This document shows, piece after piece, positions 2,902-51,284 of a DNA stretch of 64,000 nucleotides. This DNA comes from Macrostomum lignano (taxonomy: Eukaryota). The notes beneath the pieces are model-generated. The model was not told the DNA's origin. It saw only the letters and a list, made by a program, of their open reading frames with translations, and searched no databases. The DNA lies in contig NIVC01000082.1 in the NCBI GenBank assembly GCA_002269645.1, positions 477,199 to 541,198 on the forward strand. The letters run 5' to 3'. The stretch's first letter is position 1. Each line of letters starts with the position of its first letter. The position numbers were made by a program, and so were the translations under genes.

Positions 2902-5900
2902 ATGAACTATATAGTGGCACGCTGCACTTCGCCTAGTTCTGACTGCGACTTGAACAGTACAGATGCTTCTATTAGTATTGATCATGAGAATGGAAGATCT
3001 CAGACTAGACTTATGCCATCATTTTGCTCACGTCAACAGCTTGTACAAGAATTGAAGTTTACCAGATTACGATGGGATTTAAATGATATTAACTACTTTC
3101 TCTATTCACAGGTAAATGTTGTAATATTATATATTTTACTTGCAGAGCCATTTTTTGCAGAGCCATTTTATTTGCACAGCCATTTTTTGCAGAGCCATTT
3201 TTTTGCAGAGCCATTTTATTTGTAGAGCCATTTTATTTGCAGAGCCATTTTATTTGCACAGCCATTTTTTGCAGAGCCATTTTTTTGCAGAGCGATTTTA
3301 TTTGCAGAGCCATTTTATTTGCACAGCCATTTTTTGCAGAGCCATTTTATTTGCAGAGCCATTTTATTTGCACACCTGTGCAAATAGTGCTGACACCTCC
3401 TGGCATCACAGCCAGATCATGAGGCTGTGGATGACCTCGGTTGGCTTGGACTGTTGGACAGCCGCACTTTGGCTGTGGCAGCAAAGTTCAGCACAGCAGG
3501 GACTCGCAGAGGTCAGTGCAGCGCGCAACGCCGCACTGAGCGGCGGCGCGAGTGCAACTGGCGAGGGCGATTCCATAGCGCGGCCAGGCGCCTGTTGTCC
3601 CCAGTCCCTGCTACCTCAACTATGGATCCGCCGGGTGGCGCCAGGGACCATCTGGCCCCAGCTGTACCAGGTGGCCGCTTCAGGCTCGGCACGATGAACT
3701 GCCGAACTCTGAAGGCCCCCTGGTGTCGCACCATCCTTGTCCAGCTGGCCCACGACCTACAGCTGGACCTCGTCTCGCTGCAGGAGGTTTCTATCGTGGC
3801 TGAGCCGGGGCTCCACTATGAGAACCTCGGAGCCGGCTGGAGCCTCCTGTACACGTCGGCAGACAACTGCGGCCGGGGCGGTGTCGGCGTGCTGATCGGA
3901 CCGCGCCTCCAGCAGAGCGTGCACTGCATCTCGCTGTCCCCGCGACTGATGCGGGTCGAACAGCATCCGGCTGTTCTGCGCGTATGCACCCACCGCTGCT
4001 CACCCCGAGGAGGCTCGTGCCTTCTTCGACTTCCTGGCTGGGCAGCTGGAAGAGGTGCCAAACCGCGACACGCTGGCAGTGCTCGGAGACCTGAACGCAG
4101 TCCCGCGGAGGTCCGAGCGCTCGCCCTTTGTCGCGGGACGCGAGAACGCCAACACCGATGCGCTGGAGGACCTGCTTGACCGGCTGGACCTGGTGTCCGC
4201 GAACACCCAGTTCCGCAAGCCCCCTGCCCGCCTGGTCACCTTTGCGGGCTGCAAGAGAAGGCGGAGGAACGCACGCGGGCGGAATGCCACGAGGAGACTG
4301 ACGCAACTCGATCATGCGCTGGTTCGCACTCGCGAGCACCGTCGCGTCACCAGCTGCGACACCATGGCTCCGCTGGCTCTCCGGTCAGACCACCGACTCC
4401 TGATCTGCGACTTGCGGCTCCGCGACCAGCTCTACCGACCGCCAAAGCAGCGGCCACGGTGCTACTATCGCGCACTGTTGGACACCCGCGTGAAGCGTCA
4501 ATTCGCGGGTGCCTTCGTCGGCGCGCTTGGAGACCAGCGCGAGGCGGAGTATTCCGACATCAGCACCGCCGTTAGAGCCGCTGCAGAGCAGACGGTCCCG
4601 CTGATGCGGCCAGCGCAGAAATCGCTGCCTGTCTGGCAGAGCGACCCCACCATCAGGCAGGCGCGGCTCAACATCGAGCGACTCCGCAGAAACCGGAGGC
4701 CCACAGGCGACGCCGAAGACGCATTTGAGCGCCTTCTTGACGAGCAGCAGCAGGCCGCTGTCGACGACGCCATTAGGTCCATCACTGCAGCCGGCCCCGA
4801 TGTGAAGAGCCGCGCAGTGTGGACGGCCTTCCAGACTCTGACGGAGCGCAAAAAGCGCGTGGCGCTGAACCTGGCCAGCGACACCCCGGAGGAGCGCAGG
4901 AATGAATTGCGCGACTTCTTCGCCGGCATTGTGAACGCGCCAGCGTCGCCGCTGCCCGCTAGCTTTGCGCTCCCACTGGACACGCCGCTCCCAGCTGAGG
5001 AGGACTTCTGCACCAGACCAGTCGCCACGGAAGACGTTGTGCTGTACGTTCGGAAAACATCAGGCGGCAAGGCGCTCGGCCCCGGTGAAGTCCCGGTCGA
5101 AGCGCTGCGGCTCCGCTGTGTGGCCTCCCAGGTCACAGGCGTCATGAACCGCGTGCTCGCCGGCGCTTCTGCGCCTACTGAGTGGACCGTCGCGCACATC
5201 GTGCCGATCCCAAAGAAGGCAGGGACAACGCGGAAGGAAGACCACCGCGGGATCTCGCTGATGTCCTGCACCGCGAAGCTCTTCAACCGGCTGCTGCTCG
5301 ATCGCCTGCAGTCGGTGCTGGACCCGTACCTGCGGTACGAGCAGAACGGATTCCGGCCGCAACGCGGTACAGTGACACAGATCCTCGCACTCCGCCGTGT
5401 CATCGAGGAGGCGCGCATCCGCCAGTCTACGCTGATCATTGTCTTCGTTGACTTTCGAAAGGCGTTTGACTCGGTGTTGAGAGCCGCGCTTCCCTTTGTC
5501 ATTCGAGCCTACCGGGTACCCCGGCAGCTAATCGACGCTGTCATGGCGCTGGACGGCCTGTCTGACCTGTTCGATACTTCAGGGTGACACGCTAGCGCCG
5601 TTCCTCTTCGTGCTGCTGCTGGACTGGGTGCTTCGGACCGCACTCCCCTCGGCTAATGACGGCTTCCTGCTGCGCAGACGCATCGGTCGCCGCCACGGCG
5701 AAAAGCGCCTAAGCGTGCTTGGCTACGCCGACGACCTCGCCCTCCTGTCCTCGTCCGTTGAAGGCGCCCAGCGCCACATCGACAGGCTGGTCGAGGTGGC
5801 ATCGAGCGTCGGTCTGATCGTCAACACGCTGAAGACCGAGGTGCTGACTGTGCCGGCCGACATCCCAGCGGACCTGACGTGCTGCGGCGCAGACGGGCAG

Positions 5901-8900
5901 ACGACCAGGCTCGCACGCTGCCAGCGGTTCACCTACCTCGGCGGTCTGGTGTCCCACGTGGAAGAGGACCTCCGGCGGCGCAGAGGACTTGCCTGGACGG
6001 CCTTTCGTTCGATCCGAGCCTCCAGTCCTCCAGTCCGAAGCGCTGCCCGAACGCCAGAGGGCTCGGCTGCGATAGGCGGTGGTCGAAACCGTCCTGCTCT
6101 ACAACGCCGAGACGTGGACGCTGACGGCTACGCTAGAGCGGCAGCTGGACTCGGCGCACTCAGGGCTGCTCCGTGCGGCCTTTCGAGCTGACGAGAGCGT
6201 CGGGACCGAGGCCCTGTACGATCGGGCCAAGCTGCAGCGCCCGTCCATCATTCTGCGCCGGCGGCGACTTCAACTGGCGGGTCACGTGATCCGGGCCGAG
6301 GGCTACTGCCCCCAACCTGTTCAGGACGTCCTGCTGCTCACCTTGCAGGGTCCGTTCAGGCGGGGTCAGGCCCGAACCCGTCGATACGTGGACTGCCTGC
6401 TGTGCGACGCTGGGGCGCCCGACACTGCCAACGGAGCGGACTTCGTTCGCTCCAAGGCTCTGCGGCGCGCCATTTGACGCGCCCTGCTCTAACTGTGACT
6501 GTGCAGTGTGCATGCGGGGTCGCGTATTTTGTTGTTGTTGTTGTTGTATTATACAACTATGTCATATTCCACCAGATAAGTAAATGGGATGCAGAATCAA
6601 ACAATGAGTGAGTGCAATATAGTATTGGGCGATTAGAGAATCGCAGTGAAAAGATCTAGGAACAAGATAAAATAAGAGATTCGATGGACTGAGTGAGCAG
6701 ACTGGCAGATTCGATAGACTCAGTGAGCAGACTGGCAGATTCGATATAGACTGATTGAGCAGACTGGCAGATTCGATAGACTCAGTGAGCAGACTGGCAG
6801 ATTCGATATAGACTCAGTGAGCAGATTGGCAGATTCGATATAGACTCAGTGAGCAGACTGGCAGATTCGATATAGACTCAGTGAGCAGACTAGCAGATTC
6901 GATATAGACTCAGTGAGCAGACTGGCAGATTCGATATAGACTCAGTGAGCAGACTGGCAGATTCGATATAGACTCAGTGAGCAGACTGGCAGATTCGATA
7001 GACTCAGTGAGCAGACTGGCAGATTTTATAGACTCAGTGAGCAGACTGGCAGATTTTATAGACTCAGTGAGCAGACTGGCAGATTCAATAGACTCAGTGA
7101 GCAGACTGGCAGATTCGATATAGACTCAGTGAGCAGATTGGCAGATTCGATATAGACTGATTGAGCAGACTGGCAGATTCGATAGACTCAGTGAGCAGAC
7201 TGGCAGATTCGATATAGACTCAGTGAGCAGACTGGCAGATTCGATATAGACTCAGTGAGCAGATTGGCAGATTCGATATAGACTCAGTGAGCAGACTGGC
7301 AGATTTTATAGACTCAGTGAGCAGACTGGCAGATTTTATAGACTCAGTGAGCAGACTGGCAGATTCAATAGACTCAGTGAGCAGACTGGCAGATTCGATA
7401 GACTCAATGAGCAGACTGGCAGATTCGATATAGACTCAGTGAGCAGATTGGCAGATTCGATATAGCTCAGTGAGCAGACTGGCAGATTCGATATAGACTG
7501 ATTGAGCAGACTGGCAGATTCGATAGACTCAGTGAGCAGACTGGCAGATTCGATATAGACTCAGTGAGCAGATTGGCAGATTCGATATAGACTCAGTGAG
7601 CAGACTGGCAGATTCGATATAGACTCAGTGAGCAAACTGGCAGATTCGATATAGACTCAGTGAGCAGACTGGCAGATTCGATATAGACTCAGTGAGCAAA
7701 CTGGCAGATTCGATATAGACTCAGTGAGCAAACTGGCAGATTCGATATAGACTCAGTGAGCAGACTGGCAGATTCGATATAGACTCAGTGAGCAGACTGG
7801 CAGATTCGATATAGACTCAGTGAGCAGACTGGCAGATTCGATATAGACTCAGTGAGCAAACTGGCAGATTCGATATAGACTCAGTGAGCAAACTGGCAGA
7901 TTCGATATAGACTCAATCAGCAGACTGGCAGACTTAAATAATTCTGCTTCCCCACCCACCCCACCCGCTGGAAATCGCAGCTGTGCTCAGTGTGGACTCT
8001 GTGGCTGGTCCGCCTCGGCCTCACAACCGCCTACGCTTTCACTCTAATCTACGTATGCGTCACCTCGGCATCCGTTGCCATCGAAGCGGAATACGACGAA
8101 GTGCCAAATCCGTTTGAAGATTGGACAGCGGATGGGGAGAGTTCGCCAGCTGATGGCGCCGGAAATGCCAGCCTTGCCAGCAGAGGTGCGACAGAGGCTG
8201 AGACCCAACAAAAGCAACAGCCGTTTATCGTGTACTTGACTTATTGGAATTTTTTAGTGACCTGCATCTATCTGATTGGCTCCAGTGCTATTATGCTGAT
8301 AGTGAAGCTGACTGATGGAGATGCCTATAGGCTTAATGATGGGCCATATCTGGTTGCTTGGGATCATAAGGTACGTAATTATGCTTTCATTACCTTAAGT
8401 TTATATCAAGTTTTTAAAAACGATTAATGTATATGTTCTACCGAAGACGAAAGCAAAGAAATTGGCTTTGCAAAGTATTTATATACATATCGGTAATAAC
8501 ATTTTATTAAGCTGATTTTTTGTGTGGATTCGAGGACTGGGGGAGTAGAATGGCAGATTCTGGGACTAAAAAAGGATGCAATGGCAGATTCTGGGACTAA
8601 AAGGGATAGAATGGCAGATTCTGGGACTAAAAAGGGATAGAATGGCAGATTCGGAGACTAAAAGGAGGTAGAATGGCAGATTCGGAGACTAAAAGGAGGT
8701 AGAATGGCAGATTCGGAGACTAAAAGGAGGTAGAATGGCAGATTCATGTACTAAGGGAGTTCAATAAACCAACCAATCAATCAACTAAAGAATAGCAAAT
8801 TCTAATATTGAGGGAATGGAATGGCAGATTAGATTGAATAATGGAGTAAAATGGCACATTTAGAATGAGTGAGTGGAAGGGCAGTTCGAGAACTGAGAGG

Positions 8901-9610
8901 TAAAAGACAGACCTAAAAATAGCAACAAATGCTACTTTTTCTACTGTAAGTAGTTAACTTAAGGCATCATTTAAGTTTCATTAAAAAGCATTAATAAATT
9001 GCTAGCGTTAATTTCATATCCACTTACATGTAAATCTCTCCCCTCTCAGATGAAGCGTCGACCAATCAGCAGCCTGCCAGTGTGGTTCGCGGCCCACTGT
9101 ATCTGGCTGGCTATGCACACCAGCTACACCGGCTCCCTGTTAGTAACCTGCATCGGCCTATGGCACTCGTTAATTCGGCCAACCTATGCCCGACTGTTTA
9201 TGCACGGCTGCAATAGTTTTTTAATGCTAGCCGATGCTTTCACAACCGGTTTACCATTTCGGCTGGCTTATTTAATCTATGTTGAATTAGCCGGTTGGTT
9301 GTATTTGGCTTTCTCAGCCGTGTACTGGAGCTTCGATCCGTTTGGCAACGTGCTTTATCCGGGCCTGTTGGACTGGAATTCGCCCAGCTGGTCAGTAGCC
9401 GTGGCCTGTATTGTATCGCTAGTTTGTACTCCAACTCTGCACTGTCTCAGCTGGCTGTTTGCTGGGCGTTGGCGCGACTGGCTGGCCCGGCGAAGGCGCT
9501 TAACCCGACAGCTGAATGATCCTAGCAGGCGGCAGTGTCTGATTGCACCGCCTGCGGCTGGGGAGACCGCTGCTGCTAAAATGACGGCGAATGCTGAAGA
9601 TGTTTGTTGA
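2902..9610 (+). CDS. rost: Rolling stone / FAR-17a-AIG1-like multipass membrane protein
   Basis: Exons 2902-3111, 7981-8370, 9050-9610, all GT-AG phase 0. Motifs FIVYLTYWNF, HGCNS..LADAF..LPFRL, YPGLLDW match the rolling stone family. Confidence 0.8.
3140..3375. repeat. 17-18-bp tandem repeat (tgcagagccattttatt) in rost intron 1
   Basis: Directly visible; explains ORFs 3140..3697 and 3237..3422. Confidence 0.95.
3385..6548 (+). mobile_element. Near full-length decayed non-LTR retrotransposon (RTE-like, APE endonuclease + RT)
   Basis: APE motifs GTMNCRTL, SLQE, LGDLNA, TQLDHALV, SDHRLL. RT motifs GFRPQRGT, FVDFRKAFDSV, QGDTLAPFLF, GYADDLAL. No separate ORF1, (TTG)n tail at ~6529-6548. Several frameshifts and small internal deletions (~3960, ~5550, ~5580, ~6020). 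Confidence 0.92.
6677..7933. repeat. 30-32-bp minisatellite (gactcagtgagcagactggcagattcgatata)
   Basis: About 40 visible units in rost intron 1. Confidence 0.97.
8547..8750. repeat. 31-bp minisatellite (tagaatggcagattcggagactaaaaggagg)
   Basis: About 6-7 units in rost intron 2. Confidence 0.9.
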
Positions 9611-10499
9611 TTTGTTTGGGGGGGGGTTGTCTAGCAATGGTTGTTAAGAGGTCGCTAAAAACTGAATCCTACTTACTATCCAGGAAACCAAAATCGCAGG
9701 TGCCAAATCTGCATATCCCAGATTTTATATTCAGAGATCCCAAATCCCCAGATCATGTCAAAGATCCCATGCCAATTTGACAATCCCAGACACTGGCTTC
9801 TGTGATCCCATGTTTTCAAGGCTCCTATAGAACTCCCGAGAGTTTCAATACTCCAGTTGCACATCATCAAATGCATATCATCAGGTCTCAAAGAAGTCCC
9901 AAGGTCTATCTATTGATTCAAGTTTATATCCTTAGTGTTTGTTTTCTTCTCACAAAAATCTTGTTTCACAGACTGCAATATGCTTTCAATGCTTAGGTAA
10001 TAAATATTGTGAGCTGTAATCTCACTGTTGTTGCACTTTGTTGCGTATTTGTTAAAATTCGTAATTTTTACGCATATCTTTACTGTCATTTTTTTCCACG
10101 CGTGTGCATACTACTTGTTTGTCAGTAGTTCGGTGTTTTTATCTACAGCTCAGTATTGGTTTTAAACGTAAACGTTTACTTTTTTAGCATGTATATACAT
10201 GAAGGGTTCCAGGTTATTGGCGCAATTGACACTCGAGTCAATTTTCTATTTGTATATTTATAAAGGACCTCGTTTAATTCATGCCAATTGCAATTTGATT
10301 GATCTATCATTTTCAAATTATATATACACTGCATATATATAATTTTTGTGTATTTATCATTGTGATAAAGTACATTGTAGTCTTGAATTATTAACGGTGC
10401 AATTTTTGTTGTATTCATAAAAACGTTCGTTCGATACTTTATTTATACTAGCACTTAAACATGAACAAACATCTGAAAAGGCATAGAAATGACATTCCC

Positions 10500-11075
10500 T
10501 AATTAACCGCACCTGAACAGCCACCTCATACTCAAACTAATTAAAGCACACACCCACCCCAATTATCCGCACCTGCACAGCCACCTCCTACTCAAACTAA
10601 TTAAAGCACACTCCAATAATCCGCACCTGAACAGCCACCTCATACTCAAACTAATTAAATCAAGCACCCCAATTATCCACTCACCTGAACAGCCACCTCA
10701 TACTCAAACTAATTAAATAAAGCACCCCAATTATCCTCACCTGAACAGCCACCTCATACTACTCAAACTAATTAAATAAAGCACACTCCAATTATCCTCA
10801 CCTGAGCAGCCACCTCATACTCAAACTAATTAAAGCACACTCCAATTATCCTCACCTGAACAGCCACCTCATACTCAAACTGATTAAATAAAGCACCCCC
10901 AATAATCCGCACCTGAACAGCCACCTCAAACTCAATGTAATTAAATCAAGAACCCCAATTATCCGCACCTGAACAGCCACCTCAAACTCAATCTAATTAA
11001 ATCAAGCACCCTAATTATCCGCACCTGAACAGCCACCTCATACTCAAACTAATTAAATGACACACCCAAATTATA
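10500..11075. repeat. ~55-60-bp minisatellite (ccgcacctgaacagccacctcatactcaaactaattaaa...)
   Basis: About 10 units upstream of the MARCH-like acceptor. Confidence 0.92.
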
Positions 11076-11136
11076 TTTATTTGCACAGATACTCAACCTG
11101 GGCCACGCTAGTTAATATCATCTGCTCTGTTTCCAG

Positions 11137-13119
11137 GCTACAGCTGCGGCAACAGCGGCCGCTGCGGCGGCGAGAAACGGCCGCCTTCATATTGGTCGCC
11201 ATCTTCAGCGCAGTCTGCAGCCGTCGTGGCCTCAGGCCTCAGTAGCTTCCTCTAACGAGTCAATCGACGAAAACGCCGCGGAAGCCGGTGACGGATCCAT
11301 CTCGGCCTCGCCGCCAGAATGTCGAATCTGTCGCTGCTCGGCTGAGGAGCTGCGCGAACGAGCTATTAGCGACCGGCTCTATAGGGTGAAGTGCGCCTGC
11401 GCCGGCAGTCTGGGCTCCCTGTGCGGCAACTGCTACCGGATGTTTTATCTGGAGCGACAGCTGGACAGGTGACTGCCTGCATCATCCTCACCTGCACCAT
11501 TCTCACTTGTACCCGCCTCACCTCCACCATCCTTATCTGCACCTGGCCTCATCACCTGCACCCACCTCACCTGCACCATCCTCACGTGCACCCAACTCAC
11601 CTGAACCCTCCTCACCTGCACCCTCCTCACCTGCACCCTCCTCACCTGAACCCTCCTCATCTGCACCATCCTCACCTGAACCCTCCTCACCTGCACCATC
11701 CTCATCTGCACCCTCATCACCTGCACCCTCCCCACCTGCACCATCCTCAGCTGCACCATCCTCATCTGCACCATCCTCACCTGAACCCTCCTCACCTGCA
11801 CCCACCTTACATCTTTGTTTTACCTGTTATAAAACCCTAATAGCAGTAAAAACCCTAGAATCATGAAATTACATCTCAGGCTTTACTATTCGCAGATGCG
11901 AGCTCTGCCAACAGCAGATCGGTATCAACGACGCCTCCACTCTGCTCCGGCTTCGCCGCTGGTGGCAGCAATGCAAACAATCGATGCCGTTTTTGAACTT
12001 CCGTCCGCCTAGTAGTACCTGCCGCGCCGGCGTCTTCCTGTGCTCAGTGCTGTTTGTATTGTTCCTGCTCGGCGTGTTGGTTGGCTTCACGATGCAAATT
12101 GTGAGTCAACTTCAGGCTATAGTCAGGCTGTAGTTAAGCTGCGCTTCAAGCTATAATCAGACTGTAGTTAGCTGCGCTTCAGGCTATAATCAGACTGTAG
12201 TTAAGCTGCGCTTCAGGCTATAATCAGACTGTAGTTAAGCTGCGCTTCAGGCTATAATCAGACTGTAGTTAGCTGCGCTTCAGGCTATAATCAGACTGTA
12301 GTTAAGCTGCGCTTCAGGCTATAATCAGACTGTAGTTAAGCTGCGCTTCAAGCTATAATCAGGCTGTAGTTAAGCTGCGCTTTAGGCTGTAATCAGACTG
12401 TAGTTAAGCTGCGCTTCAGGCTATAATCAGACTGTAGTTAAGCTGCGCTTCAGGCTATAATCAGACTGTAGTTAAGCTGCGCTTTAGGCTGTAATCAGAC
12501 TGTAGTTAGCTGCGCTTCAGGCTATAATCAGACTGTAGTTAAGCTGCGCTTCAGGCTATAATCAGGCTGTAGTTAAGCTGCGCTTCAAGCTATAATCAGG
12601 CTGTAGTTAAGCTGCGCTTTAGGCTGTAATCAGACTGTAGTTAAGCTGCGCTTCAGGCTATAATCAGACTGTAGTTAAGCTGCGCTTCAGGCTATAACTA
12701 GGCTAAACTCCGGCTATACTTGAGATATTAAGAATACCTGGCTTCATGACCTATAAGTAGATTATATCTACTTTTAATCCAATCCAAATCTTTCGTCTGA
12801 TTTGCAGGGTCACGAGCATTGTCGCTGTCGTTGGTTGACGCAAAATCAGACCTCATTGGTTTATCCGCTTACAACTCCTGAGACAGCTGTGCTCAATTCG
12901 TCGAATTCGCAGAAATCCAGCACCGCCTCTAGTAGTAGCGCTGCTGCCGGCTACGAGCCGCTGTTTCACGGTCCCGTATTGCCCGTATTGTCGGCCATGT
13001 GCGCTATGCTGCTCCTGCTAGTTGCTTACAGTCTGCGTCGATGCCTCACCCTAAGAGTTCGTAGGATGCAGCAGCGAGCAGATATTGAAGCTGCAATTGG
13101 CGGCGATCTGGGCGATTAA
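11137..13119 (+). CDS. RINGv (MARCH-like) E3 ubiquitin ligase with two TM segments; no own start codon
   Basis: Exons 11137-11468, 11896-12100, 12808-13119 join in frame (GT-AG). ECRIC...[15 protein letters not shown]...RCELC followed by hydrophobic segments. Missed by the ORF track because there is no ATG. Confidence 0.8.
11470..11810. repeat. 15-bp tandem repeat (cctcacctgcaccat) in MARCH-like intron 1
   Basis: Directly visible; source of spurious His-rich and G/E-rich ORFs. Confidence 0.95.
12111..12700. repeat. 34-bp minisatellite (tcaggctataatcagactgtagttaagctgcgct) in MARCH-like intron 2
   Basis: About 17 visible units. Confidence 0.97.
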
Positions 13120-13354
13120 TTCAACGCTTGGGTTGCGTCATCATTAAACTAAATATCAATGCATTCGCTGATATTTTAACTTTCAAACCGATAATGAGAA
13201 TTAACAAATAAAAGAAAAATTCTCAAATTTTTATAGTCGCTTGCCATTGAACTCTTTAAGTCCTTAACCTGTATCTGTCTGTCTGTCCTATTCGATGTAC
13301 TTTTTGGCGGCAGTAACTTTGCAGATTTTTCCGTAAATATGGATGATTATTTCT

Positions 13355-13905
13355 CGTAGCCCTCATGCCGTATCTCTGAGTCTCATCACTCCCTATCTGC
13401 CCCTGTTAACCTCTGCCCCAATGTACACACGTAACAAACCCCCTATCTGTTCCTGCTATCCTCTGTCCCAATGTACACACCCCCTATCTGTTCCTGCTAT
13501 CCTCTGCCCCAATGTACACACTTCCTATCTGCCCCTGCTATCCTCTGCCCCAATGTACACACCCCCTATCTGCCCCTGCTATCCTCTGCCCCTGTATCCT
13601 CTGCCCCAATGTACACACTCCCTATCTGTCCCTGTTAACCCCCGCCCCAATGTACACACTCCCTATCTGTCCCTGTTAACCCCCGCCCCAATGTACACAC
13701 TCCCTATCTGTCCCTGTTAACCCCCGCCCCAATGTACACACTCCCTATCTGTCCCTGTTAACCCCCGCCCCAATGTACACACTCCCTATCTGCCCCTGTT
13801 AAATCCCGCCCTAATGTACACACTCCCTATCTGCCCCTGTTAACCTCTGTCCCAATATACACACTCCCTATCTGCCCCTGTTAACCTCTGTCCCAATATA
13901 CACAC
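13355..13905. repeat. 41-bp minisatellite (cctatctgcccctgttaacc..gccccaatgtacacactc)
   Basis: Directly visible. Confidence 0.93.
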
Positions 13906-14529
13906 TCCATCGTATTTTATTGGTTGATAATTTCCGTCTATCATTTTTGTTTTGATCAGGATTAAGTTTTTTATGAATAAATATACTCATAATATTCTCT
14001 TTTTAGTAGAAATTTCACGTCGTCGCTTGCGGATAGAAGTATGCAGTTTCTAATCGTATAGTAGTGTATTTTTGTAAGGCCTCCTATTTTTTTGTTTCCT
14101 TTGTTTTTTGGTTTCCGGATTCGAACCCATGTGCACACTTAACTATTTTGTTCAATATACATATTACAATAGTTTTCTGAATGAATTTTTTAAACTTTAC
14201 TTTTTAGTCTAGTTACCTTAAATGTTTATTAGAGGACCTGTGTATTTTATAGAGATGCAAACATCATGGTTTGAATTTCAAGATTTAAGGTAAAAAAATA
14301 ACATTTTCTTGTTGGCAAATTCTGTTTAAGGCAATCTTCAAGCAGCCGCTTAAATAACCAGTGGAGTAAGTACAGTAAAGAATAATTTGTGTTGCAATCT
14401 AAATTACAGTTTAAATTAAAACGCTGCTTGCTCGATTAACCACAAAGATAATGTGCGTACACACTCATAGGTCCGTTTGTTTTCGTTTTAGTCTTCTTTT
14501 CCATTGTTTACCACTCCACACCCCTCCTT

Positions 14530-15125
14530 ACCCCCTGCTCCCCCAGTTAATGTACACTCTTCAATGGCCAACCCCCTGCTCCCCTAGTTAATGTATATTC
14601 TTCTGTGACCAACCCCCTGCTCCCTCAGTTAATGTACACTCTTCAATGGCCAACCCCCTGCTCCCCTAGTTAATGTATATTCTTCTGTGACCAACCCCCT
14701 GCTCCCTTAGTTATTGTATATTCTTCTGTGACCAACCCCCTGCTCCCCTAGTTAATGTACATTCTTCTGTGACCAACCCCTGCTCCAATAGTTAATGTAC
14801 ACTCTTCAATGGCCAACCCCCTGCTCCCCTAGTTAATGTACACTCTTCTGTGACCAACCTCCTGCTCCCTCAGTTAATGTACACTCTTCAATGGCCAATC
14901 CCCTGCTCCCCTAGTTAATGTACATTCTTCTATGGCCAACCTCCTGCTCCCTCAGTTAATGTACACTCTTCAATGGCCAATCCCCTGCTCCCCTAGTTAA
15001 TGTATATTCTTCTGTGACCAACCCCCTGCTCCCCTAGTTAATGTATATTCTTCTGTGACCAACCCCCTGCTCCCCTAGTTAATGTATATTCTTCTGTGAC
15101 CAACCCCCTGCTCCCCAGTTAATGT
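14530..15125. repeat. 41-bp minisatellite (cccctgctcccctagttaatgtacattcttctgtgaccaac)
   Basis: Directly visible. Confidence 0.93.
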
Positions 15126-15610
15126 CACGATCTTCTCTCACCAACCCCAAGTATTGCTATCAGTACGTTGTGCATTGACTCCAAAAAATGTGAAACCTTT
15201 CTCACAATTAAGAAATGATACTATGAGAAGATTTTGGCGATGGCAAAACAAAGACATTTATTTGGCTGTGCTGTCACACTATCTGCTGCTACAACTTGCT
15301 TTAAGAAGCATGAACCATTGATATATAAATTATCCAATACGAGTAAGTGCTTAATTTTAGAAAATATTTAGTTATCAGGATTAATTAAAATTTACATTTT
15401 CTAATAAAGCTCAGCAAAGAACAAAATCTAGAAAATCGAAAGTCTTAAACGGGTTAAAAAATACTTCAAGTTTGTGTACACAGTTATTAGTACAAGCATA
15501 TGCTATGAAGAAATACACTGTTCATACACGCCACTTAAACGACTCTATTTCTGGTGTGTGAAGCATTTTTGTGAAAAACGAAATTTGACGTTTCGTTTGT
15601 GGGAGTGTTT

Positions 15611-15834
15611 ACCGGGTGCACTCTTGCACAGGTGACTGGTGGCGGCCGCGCCTCTGGTGTGTATACCTCTAAACAACTCGGGGGGCCCCTCTCTACTAGA
15701 TAAAGGGATCTTAATCACAACGTCAGCTACCGCACCATCCAGAGGCAGACAAAGTCTAGGGGACGAGGCCTGGTGGCTGTACCTTTCAGCACTAAAGCCC
15801 AGGGGTTGCACAGGCGTTTTCATGCAGCCCGGGT
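15611..15834. repeat. Dispersed ~210-bp repeat, copy 1 (accgggtgca...tgcagcccgggt)
   Basis: Homologous to 23570-23772, with conserved blocks separated by divergent spacers. Confidence 0.85.
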
Positions 15835-15872
15835 TTACATGTACGTCACTATCTCATCCCTCGGTGACCCGA

Positions 15873-17549
15873 TTAAGAAGAGCCTGAATCAAGAGCATCA
15901 GATAGTCTATTTTCAGGACGCGTCATGACCTTCATTTCCTCAGCTTCATCTTCAGATTCTCCGGCTGCATTTGAGCGTCTTGCTTTGGATTTTCGCTGGA
16001 GCAAGATTAGCGTTAGCACACAGTGATGAAAGATTTCGATCAGCTCGAACAAGGTGAGCACACTGCAGCCAATGTACAGGCCCAGCAGGCCGCCCGTGTC
16101 AGCCAGGAAATTCGACTTGATCGATGCTACGGATATCTTGACATTGAGCGTGGACTCAGCCACGTAGGTGCGAAAGACGCCTTCCAGCAGGTGAGCGGAG
16201 TGACTGCCGCTATCGACCTGCTTTGCAGTGTCAATCAGCTGGTGAAGCGCAGGCGCCAAGTCCTTGCTAACTTGGGTGAAACCGGTCAAGTATTCGTGAT
16301 TTTCGAAATCTGCAAAGAATTTTGCGGTTGAGCTGCCGAGCCCGGGCCACTTGCTGAATAAGAAGCTGGCGCTGTGCTCCGGACCGTAGACCGTACGGTA
16401 TTCTCGCAGACCGTAGCTTCCAGTGAGGAACTTTTCATAGCCAGCTTTAGTCATTTCTGAGGCGTTCTCACATCGGGGAGCGTCCCGGTATCGCCATGGC
16501 AACGGGTGCGGCATATTGGCGTGGCAGCTGCGAGCCTGTCAATCAAAACGCTGTTAATTTGTTCGTAGAGGCAGGCGGCGGTGCTGTAGTTGAATTCTTC
16601 TCGCCTTCGAGTCAGTGGGTTGGCAAAGACCACTGGCGATCGGTCGCTACGGCAGTGCGTGTTGTAAAGGTCTTCACTGCAGGAGTTCTCCAGCATGCTC
16701 AGCTTCACTATATACTCGTTGCCAGGTGCCATGTGGAAATTATTCTCGTATCTTAGCGACGGATAAGCACCTGGAGGGACGATTAGCATGGAGAAGCCGG
16801 AAGCTTTTAACTGGTTAATTATCTTAACTGGGTGCCAGTCCAGGAAGGAATAAGATTTGTTCTGCTCGTCAGAAATCGGCCGCACAGAGTAGCCAGAAAA
16901 GTTAAAATCTGGGAAATACGGGTCCGTCATTAGATGGATCTCAAGTACGTCACTGCAGTTGACCAACATCTGTTTGTGCTCGGCACTCAGAATCGGCTGA
17001 AAGCATATCACGTTCTTGGGGCTGTCGACTGTCTTCATTTCAACGTTTTTACCGCGAGTGCCTTGGCATACTGTGGCTCCCAGAATCGCTTGCTGCTTTT
17101 TCACCAGAAGATACCTTTCAGCAGGTGATGAGGAAATGCCAACTGCACACCGTATGTCAAGAGAAATGCCCGCACAGGTGCGAATTTGGGTTTTGATTTG
17201 TAGCCAAAAAGCCTATCAACAACATCGATAAGCCGCTGCACTTCAGCATCTAGCAGGTCGGCCTCTGATTTTGTCAGCGTGAACGGGAAGCTGCCAGAGA
17301 AGGGGCTGCTCGGGCAGAAGTACAGGTCCGGAAACACAAACGGTACCTGATCCAAGTGGTACTCTTTCGTCAGCTTGTTCTGTCTGAGTTTGAGCACCAG
17401 AACTAATGCCGCTGTTGAAAAACATGCCCATGCAGATGACGAACAGCAGAATCCACATCACGCGGACTGTTTTGCAGCGGGTGGCAGCCGCTCGGCTGAA
17501 TGCCGTGCGCTGTACTGGAGGTGATGGCCTCCACTAGAACACCCGCCAT
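15873..17549 (-). pseudogene. DEG/ENaC (amiloride-sensitive channel family) gene broken by four single-base frameshifts
   Basis: ATG 17549 MAGVLVEAITSSTAHG (HG motif), TM1 WILLFVICMGMFF, FPDLYFC, Cys-rich ectodomain, TM2 LADTGGLLGLYIGCSVLTLFEL. Frame switches near 17495, 17400, 17105, 16530. A 5'UTR intron 17576-18087 is likely. Confidence 0.85.
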
Positions 17550-32146: not shown

Positions 32147-34204
32147 TCAAAGTTTGTTCGTCCTAGCTAATCGCCAGACATCGCCGTCCAGACATTCAAC
32201 GATGCCTTCGTCGGCTAGAAACTTTAACGCCTGACCAAGATTGCGCAGGGCGCCCATTCGCAGAGCGGGGTCCGTGACCTCCGGGTACACAGTGTCCACC
32301 AGAGCCTCCGGCGTGGCGCCTGAAGGTCCAGCTTTGGCTACAGCGGTTTGCACCTGGGAGAGGCGTTAGAGTTTGAAGACGATAGGTATCAAAAAACATC
32401 ACGGTGTAGTTTATAGGTCGAGCTACGTCGTTTAAAGGATCAGTTTGATAAATCAAGTGGCGCACCTGATTAATTCTCTGCATCCTGTGCTCAACGTATT
32501 CGTTCAGCTTATCAGCTGGTTGCTCAATGACGTCACCGTGAGCCGAGTACATGACTCGAATGTCAGGCAGGGTCTGCATGAGACGCAGGGAGCGCATGTA
32601 GCCGGTGAGGTCCTCGAATACGCCGCTGCCATGACCGAGGACAGAGTCGCCACAGAACAGTGCGGACTCGGTCGGATAGAGCAGGCACAGGTGATCGTCT
32701 GTGTGTCCCGGCGTGTGCAGCACCTGCGTGGTCACGGGTGCGAGTGTACTTTTAGCTGAGTGGCCCAGCAACTGATCTGGGAGGCTGTCCCATCAACTGA
32801 CAGTCTGGAAGGCTGGCCCAGCAACTGAGGATCTGAGAGAATGGCCCAGCAACTGAGGATCTGAGAGAGTGGCCTAGCAACTGAGGATCTGAGAGAGTGG
32901 CCTAGCAACTGAGGATCTGAGAGAGTGGCCTAGCAACTGAGGATCTGGGAGAGTGGCCCAGCAACTGAGAATTTGGGAGAGTGGCCCAGCAACTGAGAAT
33001 TTGGGAGAGTGGCCCAGCAACTGAGGATCTGAGAGAGTGGCCCAGCAACTGAGGATCTGAGAAAGTGGCCCTAGACATCGCAAGTTCACCAAGCAGCCGC
33101 ACCTTCAGCTGCACTTCGCCGCACTGCAGCAGGTCACCATCTCGCAGGTTGTGAAACACCAGGCCGTCAGTGTGGGGCGGCTGCGGATGCGTCAGCGAGG
33201 GAAACTTGTGCACAGTGGCGTAGGCGGCGCTTTCAGTCCACAGCATCTGCTGAAGCGCCACAGCGCTGCCACCGTGATCGGGGTGCCAGTGAGTGAGCAC
33301 CAACTTATCCACGGTGCAGCGCTCTTCCCGCAGCACCTTATTTTGATTGGGAAAATAAAATGTAAGTGCGATTTAGTGCCGAATATTGAGAGTCCTATTT
33401 TAGTCCCGAGTATTGAGAGTCCCATTCTAGTCTTGAGTATTGAGAGTCCCATTCTAGTCCCGAGTATTGAGATTCCCATTCTAGTCCCGAGTATTGAGAG
33501 TCCCATTTTAGTCCCGAGTATTGAGAGTCCCATTCTAGTCCCGAATATTAGAGTCCCATTCTAGTCCCAAATATAAAGAGTCCCATTCTAGTCCCGAATA
33601 TTTAGAGTCCCATTCCAGTACCAAATATTAAGGGTCCCATTCTAGTCCCGAGTATTGAGAGTCACATTATAGTTCCGAATATTGAGAGTCCCGTTCTAGT
33701 CCCGAGTATTGAGAGTCCCATTCTAGTCTCGAATATTGAGAGTCCCGTTCTAGTCCCGAGTATTGAGAGTTCCATTCTAGTCTCGAATATTGAGAGTCCC
33801 ATTCTAGTCCCGAGTATTGAGAGTCCCATTCTAGTCTCGAATATTGAGAGTCCCATTCTAGTCTCGAATATTGAGAGTCCCATTCTAGTCCCGAATGTTG
33901 AGAATCCTATTTTAGTCCTAGATAAGAGTCCCATTCTAGTCCCGAATATTGAGAGTCCCATTCTAGTCCCAAATATTGAGAGTCCCATTCAAGTCCCGCC
34001 ACTCTAACATACCTGGCGCACTAAGTCAATATACTCTGGCTTATCTGGACTGCTGGTGTCAATCATTAAGCGCTTGGCTCCAGTGCCAATTAAATAACAA
34101 TTAGTACCTTGTAGAGTAAATGGGCTTGGATTTTGGCCAAGAATGCGGATTATTGAACTTGATAGGCGCTGTATGTCAGCTAGCTTAGGTAGCATTGCTG
34201 CCAT
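32147..34204 (-). CDS. LACTB2: Endoribonuclease LACTB2 (metallo-beta-lactamase fold), 296 aa
   Basis: Exons 34204-34013, 33336-33103, 32723-32466, 32353-32147, all phase 0 GT-AG. Motifs LGQNPSPFTLQGTNCYL, THWHPDHGG, TPGHTDDH, FCGDSVLG, AHG. Confidence 0.93.
32812..33062. repeat. 28-bp minisatellite in LACTB2 intron 2
   Basis: gagagagtggcccagcaactgaggatct units. Confidence 0.95.
33385..33990. repeat. 27-bp minisatellite in LACTB2 intron 1
   Basis: gagagtcccattctagtcccgagtatt units. Confidence 0.95.
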
Positions 34205-50723: not shown

Positions 50724-51284
50724 ATGGATTGGCCATCCATCCGTCGCTTATTATTCTACCCAGCTGTCACCAAGTCGCTGACGTGGCGACTGCTTGGCCT
50801 GTCTGACTGGTACAACCGCATCGATGAGCATCTCGTGCTGGGCGCGCTGCCATTGGCTAGAGAATTCCAGTCTGTAGCAAAATCTGAGAACATCAAAGCT
50901 GTACTGAGTATAAACGAACCGCACGAGGTTAAGCCGGCTTGGGTTGCCGGGGAGAAAGAGTGCCGCAGGCTGGGCCTAGCTCGGATGCAAATATCTGTAC
51001 CAGATTTTGGCGGTCATTCGCCAAGCGCTAGACAGTTGCAGAAATGCTGCGACTTTATCGAATCAACGGTTGTTAAGGGCGGCAGCGTGTACTTGCACTG
51101 CAGAGCTGGTAGGACTCGAAGCGGCACAGTGGCCGCGGCTTATCTAATGCGGCGCCATCGGTCCCTGGCGCCAGTGGATGCATGCGATAGATTGCGCGCC
51201 AAACGGCCCAGTTTACTGTTGAATCGGCCTCAGCTGGATGCGCTGCATGAATTCTGGAGATTAGAGCAGGCTAGAGAAAGATGA
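50724..51284 (+). CDS. PTPMT1: Phosphatidylglycerophosphatase / mitochondrial dual-specificity phosphatase, single exon
   Basis: RLLFYP..WYNRIDEHLVLGALP and VYLHCRAGRTRS P-loop. Confidence 0.92.
   Translation: MDWPSIRRLLFYPAVTKSLTWRLLGLSDWYNRIDEHLVLGALPLAREFQSVAKSENIKAVLSINEPHEVKPAWVAGEKECRRLGLARMQISVPDFGGHSPSARQLQKCCDFIESTVVKGGSVYLHCRAGRTRSGTVAAAYLMRRHRSLAPVDACDRLRAKRPSLLLNRPQLDALHEFWRLEQARER

What the first reader, a model, noticed from the sequence alone, without database searches (positions are those of the whole stretch)
11089..11468. MARCH-like gene has no start codon: candidate for spliced-leader-donated AUG
Seen: the RING exon starts in phase 0 right after a strong acceptor (ctctgtttccAG|gct aca gct). 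An in-frame TAA lies 24 nt upstream, and the first in-frame ATG (11440) falls after six of the eight RING ligands. Adding a single Met gives [16 protein letters not shown], a very natural N-terminus. The only upstream mini-exon I found (9972-9996) splices into the wrong frame. Established: flatworm spliced leaders end in AUG, and in Schistosoma that AUG can act as initiator Met. Inference: this gene depends on trans-splicing for its start codon.
Basis: partly seen in the sequence, partly recalled or inferred. Interest (0 to 1): 0.8.

Follow-up and report, generated by a model that had tools for sequence, protein, structure and literature searches.

The report
Flatworm RING gene without own ATG
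A membrane RING-finger gene of the flatworm Macrostomum lignano really has no usable start codon in the genome and most likely gets its AUG from the trans-spliced leader, a mechanism already documented in flatworms; no RNA read confirming this could be obtained here.

Summary
The window is Macrostomum lignano (Mlig_3_7 scaffold NIVC01000082.1). A 3-exon gene (11137-11468, 11896-12100, 12808-13119) encodes a 282-aa RING-CH-like protein with two TM helices. An in-frame TAA sits at 11113-15. The first in-frame ATG (11440) lies after six of eight zinc ligands.

All six public models of this gene are 5'-partial and none starts with Met. The single M. lignano SL ends in ATG. The acceptor TTCCAG|G matches the published trans-splice motif YTNCAG. 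SL plus exon 1 would give a first AUG in frame and a 283-aa ORF. The Mlig_3_7 annotation trimmed the SL before ORF calling, which would make such genes look "partial".

No SL-junction read was obtainable, so trans-splicing at 11137 is inferred, not shown. Rivals remain:
- a 1-nt A-run variant seen in older ML2 models that would connect a genomic ATG at 11057;
- non-AUG initiation;
- a decaying gene copy.

SL-donated initiator AUGs are known from Schistosoma (Cheng 2006) and are already noted for Macrostomum. This is a likely new member of a known kind. It matters mostly for annotation.

The parts
9050..9610 (+). Last coding exon and stop codon (9608-10) of the upstream same-strand gene, which is Rolling-stone (Rost)-like
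   Evidence: ORF and sequence. Pfam Rost 24.9 bits, E 1.6e-5, just under the gathering score. Annotated as a 386-aa product in GenBank.
9999..10004 (+). AATAAA, likely poly(A) signal of the upstream gene.
10189..10212 (+). Rival candidate: ATG mini-exon (MYIHEGFQ) in phase 0 with acceptor 11137.
   Evidence: Enumeration. The donor does not fit the M. lignano consensus GT[G/A]AG (PMC8629364).
10497..11074 (+). 56-bp tandem repeat, 10.2 copies, filling half of the space between the upstream gene and the acceptor (the presumed outron)
11057..11059 (+). Rival: genomic ATG in frame +1, inside the last repeat unit. It would be contiguous with the RING frame only if the A-run 11175-77 had four A's.
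11113..11115 (+). In-frame TAA, 24 nt upstream of the exon
11122..11136 (+). Pyrimidine tract (12/15 Y) ending in TTCCAG, the presumed SL trans-splice acceptor
   Evidence: It matches [T/C]TNCAG (PMC8629364). It is the only site of this strength between 9 and 14 kb, and one of 15 in the 64 kb.
11137..11468 (+). Coding exon 1: Ala/Thr tract, a region predicted to be disordered, and RING ligands 1-6. No usable ATG.
   Evidence: 100% identical to the public protein models.
11137..11175 (+). Imperfect (GCN)12-AGA tract encoding [13 protein letters not shown]. Both GenBank partial CDSs start immediately after it (11176, 11179).
11175..11177 (+). AAA run. The ML2-derived UniProt model A0A1I8GVM6 (4 entries) implies AAAA here, which shifts the upstream frame.
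11319..11321 (+). First genomic ATG of the exon, out of frame (MSNLSLLG*)
11440..11442 (+). First in-frame genomic ATG, after six of eight RING ligands
11469..11895 (+). Intron 1 (GT..AG), mostly a 15-bp tandem repeat (11476-11807)
11896..12100 (+). Coding exon 2: RING ligands 7-8 (CELC) and TM helix 1
12101..12807 (+). Intron 2 (GTGAGT..AG), with a 34-bp tandem repeat at 12110-12697
12808..13119 (+). Coding exon 3: TM helix 2 and stop TAA at 13117-19. An AATAAA follows at 13207.

Best explanation
This is a Macrostomum lignano gene (GenBank Mlig032966.g2, with a duplicate Mlig015662.g3) for a divergent RING-CH-type protein with two TM helices. Its genomic copy has no initiator codon.

Proposed mechanism: the pre-mRNA is made either from its own promoter or as the downstream cistron of the Rost-like gene that ends about 1.1 kb upstream. 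It is trans-spliced at TTCCAG|G (11136/11137) to the 35-nt spliced leader CGGTCTCTTACTGCGAAGACTCAATTTATTGCATG. The 3'-terminal AUG of the leader then becomes the first AUG of the mRNA, in frame and with G at +4. It initiates a 283-aa protein, [16 protein letters not shown]....

Shown: the absence of a genomic start, the frame relations, the motif match, the SL sequence, and the 5'-partial state of all public models.
Inferred: that trans-splicing happens at this site, and that the SL AUG is used.
For: 1. Organism and SL. The window is 100% identical to NIVC01000082.1. The SL ends in ATG and the trans-acceptor motif is [T/C]TNCAG (PMC8629364).
2. Acceptor. 11131-36 is TTCCAG with 12/15 pyrimidines upstream. 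It is the only such site between 9 and 14 kb. GC content jumps from 0.43 to 0.67 at 11137.
3. Frame. SL plus exons gives a first AUG at SL positions 33-35 and a 283-aa ORF. The genomic in-frame region 11116-11439 has no ATG, yet it encodes six RING ligands. These are conserved at 60% identity over 60 aa in a homologue from another run (tblastn E 5e-15). Translation must therefore start upstream of 11320.
4. Public models. All six are Met-less and 5'-partial. Mlig_3_7 ORFs were called after the SL was trimmed (PMC5730564), which would produce exactly this artefact.
5. ML2 model starts. Both kinds of ML2 model start at 11126. A cDNA carrying the SL joined at 11137 would extend by local alignment (+5/-4) exactly 11 nt, to 11126. 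Only 1.1% of AG sites in the window give 11 nt. The rival mini-exon cDNAs predict a start at 11129 or later.
6. Precedent. The SL AUG is in frame in 28% of S. mansoni trans-spliced mRNAs and is required by more than 40 cDNAs (Cheng 2006, as cited in PMC9851317). The Macrostomum SL ATG is labelled a translation start codon in PMC10468722.
7. Context. There is a same-strand upstream gene with an AATAAA at 9999. The repeat-adjusted distance is about 540 nt, within the <1 kb operon criterion of PMC8629364.
Against: - No read, EST or transcript contig showing the SL/11137 junction was obtainable.
- The GenBank CDSs begin at 11176 and 11179, not 11137. The TBONE pipeline therefore apparently had no SL peak at 11137. 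I attribute this to low expression and poor end-to-end mapping across the GC-rich GCN tract, but that is an assumption.
- Item 5 above rests on an assumption about the aligner used for ML2, which I could not verify.
- Codon-usage scoring of the Ala tract does not favour the RING frame (weak test).
- Other in-frame AG sites (11209, 11221, 11236, 11260) could be the real junction, so the exact N-terminus is uncertain.
- The paralogue uses a short cis-spliced ATG exon in phase 0. This raises the prior for a missed cis exon here.
Confidence: 0.62

Rival explanations
1. An ordinary cis-spliced 5' mini-exon supplies the ATG. The candidates are 10189-10212 (MYIHEGFQ, CAG|GTTATT), 9637-9699 (CAG|GTGCCA) and 9871-9903 (AAG|GTCTAT). 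All are in phase 0 with acceptor 11137.
For: The candidates exist and are intact in the duplicate locus L002. The M. lignano paralogue Mlig021305.g2 has exactly this design: a 57-nt ATG exon, a phase-0 donor and a 1.25-kb repeat-filled intron. Short first exons are easily missed by transcript assemblers.
Against: None of the donors fits GT[G/A]AG (PMC8629364). 9637-9699 lies 27 nt after the upstream gene's stop, inside its 3'UTR. Neither the ML2 nor the Mlig_3_7 transcript-based annotation includes an upstream exon. A cDNA carrying these exons would be expected to align from 11129 or later, not 11126.
Confidence: 0.12
2. The reference has a 1-nt error, or a variant exists. With AAAA at 11175-77, the genomic ATG at 11057 is contiguous and in frame with the RING ([44 protein letters not shown]...). 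The reader's 9980 mini-exon joined to acceptor 11089 would also be in frame. No SL AUG would then be needed.
For: UniProt A0A1I8GVM6 (four identical ML2 entries) reads ...RRRE|NGRL, which requires the extra A. ATG 11057 is in that frame and is preceded by a stop.
Against: Both Mlig_3_7 copies have AAA. Mlig_3_7 was Pilon-polished with Illumina DNA and RNA reads and keeps more intact ORFs than ML2, which was built from the same PacBio data (PMC5730564). The AAAA models themselves start at 11126, not at the Met of 11057, so their transcript evidence did not reach it. ATG 11057 lies in the last unit of an AT-rich tandem repeat.
Confidence: 0.06
3. The mRNA is not trans-spliced. Translation starts at a near-cognate codon (for example in-frame CTG at 11122 or 11215), or at Met 11440, which would give a RING-less two-TM protein.
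For: The GenBank transcripts appear to begin near 11175 without an SL-defined boundary. In-frame CTG codons exist.
Against: The RING region upstream of 11440 is conserved as protein, so it is translated. Neither CTG combines a purine at -3 with G at +4. The first AUG of such an mRNA would be the out-of-frame 11319.
Confidence: 0.07
4. The locus is a decaying duplicate that lost its start codon in this hidden polyploid and is no longer translated.
For: There is no start codon in any copy. The family is lineage-restricted, with only four hits among 1.8 billion representatives. A paralogue with an intact ATG exists.
Against: The rest of the gene is intact: three exons with canonical GT-AG, a 282-codon ORF, all eight ligands and both TM helices. 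The models were built from transcripts, so the gene is expressed.
Confidence: 0.07
5. The RING exons are an alternative 3' part of the upstream Rost-like gene. Its phase-0 donor at 8370|8371 could splice in frame to 11137.
For: The phases match (...AWDHK|ATAAAT), and the genes are on the same strand.
Against: Both annotations keep the genes separate. The Rost-like gene has its own terminal exon, stop and AATAAA. A phase match has a 1/3 chance of arising by itself.
Confidence: 0.02

Closest known systems
Schistosoma mansoni mRNAs that use the SL 3'-terminal AUG as initiator Met (Cheng, Cohen, Ndegwa & Davis, J Biol Chem 2006; 'slORFs' in PMC9851317)
   Same: Flatworm SL ending in AUG. The acceptor is placed so that the SL AUG is in frame. 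There is no genomic AUG upstream of the essential part of the ORF.
   Different: In Schistosoma, cDNAs carrying the SL were sequenced and translation from the SL AUG was tested. Here the junction and the initiation are inferred. The species differs (a free-living macrostomorph) and the SL sequence differs.
M. lignano paralogue Mlig021305.g2 (P0014, locus L005)
   Same: Same lineage-specific family: a RING-CH-like domain with Cys in place of the family His, two TM helices and an AYS/FSY-RR motif after TM2.
   Different: It has its own ATG (AG|ATGATGGAG) on a 57-nt first coding exon that is cis-spliced in phase 0. It has two coding exons rather than three. It is only about 27% identical overall.
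MARCH / c-MIR family of membrane RING-CH E3 ubiquitin ligases
   Same: An N-terminal C-x2-C...C-x-C-x7-[ligand]-x2-C...C-x2-C zinc-finger spacing followed by two TM helices. The best PDB sequence hit is the c-MIR (MARCH8) RING-CH domain, 2d8s. UniProt names it 'RING-CH-type domain-containing'.
   Different: The fifth ligand is Cys, not His. Pfam RINGv scores 16.4 bits against a cut-off of 21.6, the PDB hit has E 0.42, and Foldseek gives no significant match. Ligase activity is untested.
Downstream genes of M. lignano operons (Ustyantsev & Berezikov 2021, PMC8629364)
   Same: A same-strand upstream gene, a repeat-rich spacer shorter than 1 kb after subtracting repeats, and a YTNCAG acceptor at the 5' end of the downstream gene.
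   Different: Polycistronic transcription and SL addition are not shown for this pair.

Membership tests
SL-AUG-initiated flatworm mRNAs (slORFs) | The organism has an SL whose 3' end is AUG | tested here: met
   Organism identified as M. lignano. The SL is CGGTCTCTTACTGCGAAGACTCAATTTATTGCATG (PMC8629364). There is no SL RNA gene in the window itself.
SL-AUG-initiated flatworm mRNAs (slORFs) | The mRNA is trans-spliced at the acceptor that starts the ORF | tested here: inconclusive
   For: motif and pyrimidine tract fit, and the ML2 model start at 11126 fits an SL-bearing cDNA. Against: no junction read was available, and the GenBank models start at 11176 and 11179.
SL-AUG-initiated flatworm mRNAs (slORFs) | The SL AUG is in frame with the main ORF with no intervening stop | tested here: met
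   SL plus exons translates to 283 aa from the SL AUG.
SL-AUG-initiated flatworm mRNAs (slORFs) | No genomic in-frame AUG that could yield the functional protein | tested here: met
   TAA at 11113-15. The first in-frame ATG, 11440, comes after six ligands. This holds for the AAA sequence present in both Mlig_3_7 copies.
SL-AUG-initiated flatworm mRNAs (slORFs) | Translation actually initiates at the SL AUG | not testable with these tools
   Needs ribosome profiling, N-terminal proteomics or a reporter.
MARCH / RING-CH membrane E3 ligases | RING-CH (C4HC3) domain recognised by the family model | tested here: not met
   Pfam RINGv scores 16.4 bits, below the gathering score of 21.6. Ligand 5 is Cys (CGNC), not His, in this protein and in both homologues. 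The spacing is otherwise RING-CH-like.
MARCH / RING-CH membrane E3 ligases | Two or more TM helices C-terminal to the RING | tested here: met
   Hydropathy peaks at residues ~150-181 and ~231-255. AF2 helices at 138-177 and 223-264 of P0004, with pLDDT 72-85 in their hydrophobic cores.
MARCH / RING-CH membrane E3 ligases | RING cross-brace fold / E3 activity | tested here: inconclusive
   The AF2 model has mean pLDDT 55.8. The top Foldseek hits are RING domains (including 2d8s), but all have E of at least 0.075. Activity is not testable.
M. lignano operon, downstream gene | Same-strand neighbour less than 1 kb away after subtracting repeats | tested here: met
   AATAAA at 9999 to acceptor 11137 is about 1.1 kb. 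Subtracting the 578-nt tandem repeat leaves about 0.54 kb. The criterion is from PMC8629364.
M. lignano operon, downstream gene | Polycistronic precursor and SL on the downstream gene | not testable with these tools
   No RNA data were reachable.

The most novel reading that the evidence does not exclude
After duplication of a Macrostomum-specific family of RING-CH-like two-TM genes, one paralogue (Mlig021305.g2) kept its own AUG. This one has none and depends entirely on SL trans-splicing for its first codon. By extension, a sizeable share of the '5'-partial' gene models in M. lignano (GenBank and UniProt) would be complete SL-initiated ORFs, truncated only because annotation pipelines trim the leader together with its ATG.
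Probability: 0.45. Interest if true: 0.4.

Novelty: new member of a known kind. Interest (0 to 1): 0.3.

Why it matters
If confirmed, this is a concrete, checkable case in a transgenic model flatworm of a protein whose first codon is not encoded at its locus. For such a gene, trans-splicing is required for coding, not only for 5'-end maturation.

Practical consequences:
- Met-less "partial" M. lignano models may be repairable by restoring the SL ATG.
- Reporter or rescue constructs for such genes need an artificial ATG.
- SL-trimming steps in annotation pipelines should keep the terminal ATG.

The mechanism itself has been known since 2006, so the conceptual gain is small.

Tried and rejected
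- Duplicate locus L002. It is 100% identical from 11000 to 13178 and nearly so upstream, so it says nothing about constraint or about the mini-exons.
- Third copy L003. Everything upstream of intron 2 is a scaffold gap of N's.
- Codon-usage log-odds for the Ala tract. The training set is tiny and the result does not discriminate.
- Protein searches.
  - The full-length query was swamped by low-complexity words and missed the real homologues.
  - A fragment query found nothing at all.
  - Homologues came only from the exhaustive representative search and a search with P0008.
- Look-ups.
  - The UniProt models are not on record on any contig, so the ML2 DNA (AAA versus AAAA) could not be read.
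  - A JGI metagenome scan for the exact SL/exon-1 junction gave 0 hits.
- Literature.
  - The gene IDs appear in no searchable main text, nor in the one supplement set checked (PMC5816591).
  - Wasik et al. 2015 is not held, so the ML2 annotation method is unverified.
- Rfam on the window gave no hits. The SL sequence is not in the window.
- N-terminal resemblance to the paralogue (MMESAASDAVEETAAF versus [17 protein letters not shown]). BLASTP aligns only the CRIC region, so I rejected it as evidence.
- AG at 11173-74 as the trans-splice site. It would explain the 11176 start of one GenBank model. It has no pyrimidine tract, puts the SL AUG out of frame (a 28-codon ORF, by hand translation), and does not explain the 11179 start of the identical copy.
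- Structure prediction and fold search. Confidence was too low to add more than "RING-like plus two long helices".
Full report
**Origin of the window.** The window is eukaryotic, with spliced genes and introns full of tandem repeats. A protein search with the spliced translation of the finding returned only Macrostomum lignano entries. The GenBank locus of one of them (NIVC01000082.1, assembly GCA_002269645.1 = Mlig_3_7) is 100% identical to window 7176-17119.

**Observation.** All the stated features are present.
- The acceptor is ctctgtttccAG|GCT, with the exon starting at 11137.
- The in-frame TAA is at 11113-15.
- The reading frame is open to the donor CAG|GTGACT (exon end 11468).
- Exon 1 contains only two ATGs. 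One at 11319 is out of frame and opens a 9-codon ORF. The other at 11440 is in frame.
- Six zinc-ligand cysteine codons (11320, 11329, 11392, 11398, 11422, 11431) precede 11440. The last two ligands (CELC) are in exon 2.
Its 'donor' GTAATA overlaps an AATAAA at 9999-10004, which is more simply the poly(A) signal of the upstream gene.

**Gene and protein.** The gene has three coding exons (11137-11468, 11896-12100, 12808-13119) with canonical GT-AG introns. They give 282 codons plus a stop, identical to the public models.

The protein has an Ala/Thr tract and then a region predicted to be disordered. A C-x2-C...C-x-C-x7-C-x2-C...C-x2-C finger follows, then two hydrophobic helices.

It is only loosely a MARCH protein.
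- Pfam RINGv scores 16.4 bits against a cut-off of 21.6.
- The best PDB sequence hit is the c-MIR (MARCH8) RING-CH domain, at E 0.42.
- The AlphaFold model is of low confidence, and Foldseek gives only non-significant RING hits.
- The family histidine is replaced by cysteine, and both homologues share this replacement.

An exhaustive search of 1.8 billion representatives found just four hits: a near-identical M. lignano model, a low-complexity match to an unrelated 1803-aa protein, one transcript-derived homologue, and a tick RING-CH protein.

**Public annotation.** No public model of this gene has a Met.
- UniProt A0A1I8H642 and A0A1I8GJG5 start CFQATAAAT..., that is, at 11128, inside the pyrimidine tract.
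- A0A1I8GVM6 (four entries) starts [17 protein letters not shown]|NGRL..., at 11126 in another frame.
- GenBank PAA91674.1 and PAA91597.1 are labelled 'partial' and start at NGRL (11176) and GRL (11179).

Two independent, transcript-based annotation efforts therefore found neither a start codon nor an upstream coding exon.

**What is established about the leader.**
- M. lignano has one 35-nt SL, CGGTCTCTTACTGCGAAGACTCAATTTATTGCATG.
- About 30% of its genes are trans-spliced, and 15% lie in operons.
- The top motif at trans-acceptors is [T/C]TNCAG (PMC8629364).
- All reported flatworm SLs end in ATG (PMC12582326).
- In S. mansoni the SL AUG is in frame in 28% of trans-spliced mRNAs, and more than 40 cDNAs need it (Cheng et al. 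2006, as cited in PMC9851317).
- For Macrostomum, the SL ATG has already been labelled a translation start codon (PMC10468722).
- The Mlig_3_7 pipeline trimmed the SL from reads and transcripts before running TransDecoder (PMC5730564). A gene that relies on the SL AUG would therefore come out as a 5'-partial ORF.

**Fit of this locus.**
- The acceptor TTCCAG matches the motif and has 12 pyrimidines in the 15 nt upstream.
- Only 15 sites of that strength occur on this strand in 64 kb, and this is the only one between 9 and 14 kb.
- GC content jumps from 0.43 to 0.67 at 11137.
- Joining the SL to 11137 makes the SL AUG the first AUG of the mRNA, in frame, with G at +4. It opens a 283-aa ORF.
- Translation must begin upstream of 11320. 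The RING region before the first genomic ATG is conserved as protein in a homologue from another sequencing run (60% identity over 60 aa, tblastn E 5e-15).

**A coincidence that supports the model.** Both kinds of ML2 model begin at 11126. A cDNA carrying the SL at 11137, aligned locally with +5/-4 scoring, would over-extend by exactly 11 nt to 11126. Only 1.1% of the AG sites in the window give that extension. cDNAs carrying the rival mini-exons would over-extend only to 11129 or later. I could not verify which aligner was used for ML2, so I count this as suggestive only.

**Rivals.**
None has a GT[G/A]AG donor, and none appears in any annotation. The paralogue Mlig021305.g2 does use a 57-nt ATG exon spliced in phase 0 across a 1.25-kb repeat-filled intron, so a missed cis exon cannot be dismissed.
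- *A-run variant.* The four-entry ML2 model implies AAAA instead of AAA at 11175-77. With that extra base, a genomic ATG at 11057 would be contiguous with the RING frame. Several points argue against it:
  - Both Mlig_3_7 copies have AAA.
  - Mlig_3_7 was Pilon-polished with Illumina DNA and RNA reads. It is reported to keep more intact ORFs than ML2, which was built from the same PacBio data.
  - The AAAA models themselves do not reach 11057.
- *Other rivals.* Non-AUG initiation, a start at Met 11440, a decaying duplicate, and an in-frame chimera from the upstream gene's phase-0 donor at 8370 are each possible but less economical.

**Against the favoured model.**
- The GenBank CDSs start at 11176 and 11179 rather than at 11137. 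The pipeline therefore probably had no SL-read peak here.
- Both starts fall immediately after the GC-rich (GCN)12 tract. The two identical copies also differ by 3 nt, which looks like coverage-limited assembly rather than an SL-defined boundary. That reading is my assumption.
- Other in-frame AG sites (11209, 11221, 11236, 11260) could be the true junction. They would leave the SL-AUG idea intact but change the N-terminus.

**Context.** The upstream same-strand gene is Rolling-stone-like. It ends at 9610 and has an AATAAA at 9999. The spacer to 11137 is about 1.1 kb, of which 578 nt is a 56-bp tandem repeat. After subtracting the repeat, the distance meets the published <1 kb operon criterion. 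Whether the two genes are co-transcribed is unknown.

**Limits.** No RNA reads or M. lignano transcript contigs for this gene were reachable. The duplicate loci are identical or gapped.

**Verdict.** SL-donated initiator codons are a known flatworm mechanism already noted for this genus. This is therefore a probable new member of a known kind, with practical value mainly for annotation and construct design.

Noticed in passing
window 11422-11433; P0008 and P0014: The fifth zinc ligand of the RING-CH pattern, His in MARCH proteins, is Cys (C-G-N-C) in this protein, in its M. lignano paralogue and in the Logan homologue. This defines a lineage-restricted C4-C-C3 variant family with very few relatives in 1.8 billion representatives.
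   Followed up: partly
window 11175-11177: UniProt A0A1I8GVM6 (four identical ML2-derived entries) implies AAAA where Mlig_3_7 has AAA, which shifts the upstream frame. It is probably an unpolished PacBio insertion, but the same change in four models is not fully explained.
   Followed up: partly
window 10207-10213 vs 11131-11137: The heptamer TTCCAG|G at the end of the candidate mini-exon 10189-10212 is identical to the acceptor heptamer at 11131-37. The 10212 'donor' therefore itself looks like a YTNCAG acceptor.
   Followed up: no
L005 5995-6006 (NIVC01000720.1): The paralogue's CDS starts directly after an AG (ttaatAG|ATGATGGAG). If that AG were a trans-splice site, the SL AUG would also be in frame there (M-M-M-E). 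The site does not match YTNCAG.
   Followed up: no
window 8370/8371 and 11137: The penultimate coding exon of the upstream Rost-like gene ends in phase 0. Skipping its last exon would therefore join in frame to the RING exon (...AWDHK|ATAAAT).
   Followed up: partly
window 10497-11074, 11476-11807, 12110-12697, 13387-13908, 14530-15148 and many more: Almost every intron and spacer is filled with tandem repeats of 15-82 bp periods. These also create many long spurious ORFs across the window.
   Followed up: no
window ~3400-6500 (+): A LINE-like retroelement ORF with endonuclease (Exo_endo_phos, weak) and reverse transcriptase (RVT_1) domains in a 65% GC island. It lies upstream of, or within an intron of, the Rost-like gene.
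   Followed up: no
window 15873-17104 (-), 32196-33336 (-), 50724-51284 (+), 52424-53203 (+): Other genes in the window: an amiloride-sensitive sodium channel (ASC) exon, a metallo-beta-lactamase-fold gene, a dual-specificity phosphatase with its own ATG, and an Alg9-like mannosyltransferase exon.
   Followed up: no
L003 1-4511 (NIVC01000827.1): A third copy of the gene is annotated only as a 102-aa exon-3 fragment, because everything upstream is a scaffold gap of N's.
   Followed up: yes
L004 1-80 (Logan SRR31628394 contig): The homologous transcript from an unidentified species has four in-frame ATGs (positions 16, 55, 64, 79) before the RING. Its frame is open to the contig's 5' end, and no Macrostomum-type SL is visible. 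The gene caller chose the last ATG.
   Followed up: partly
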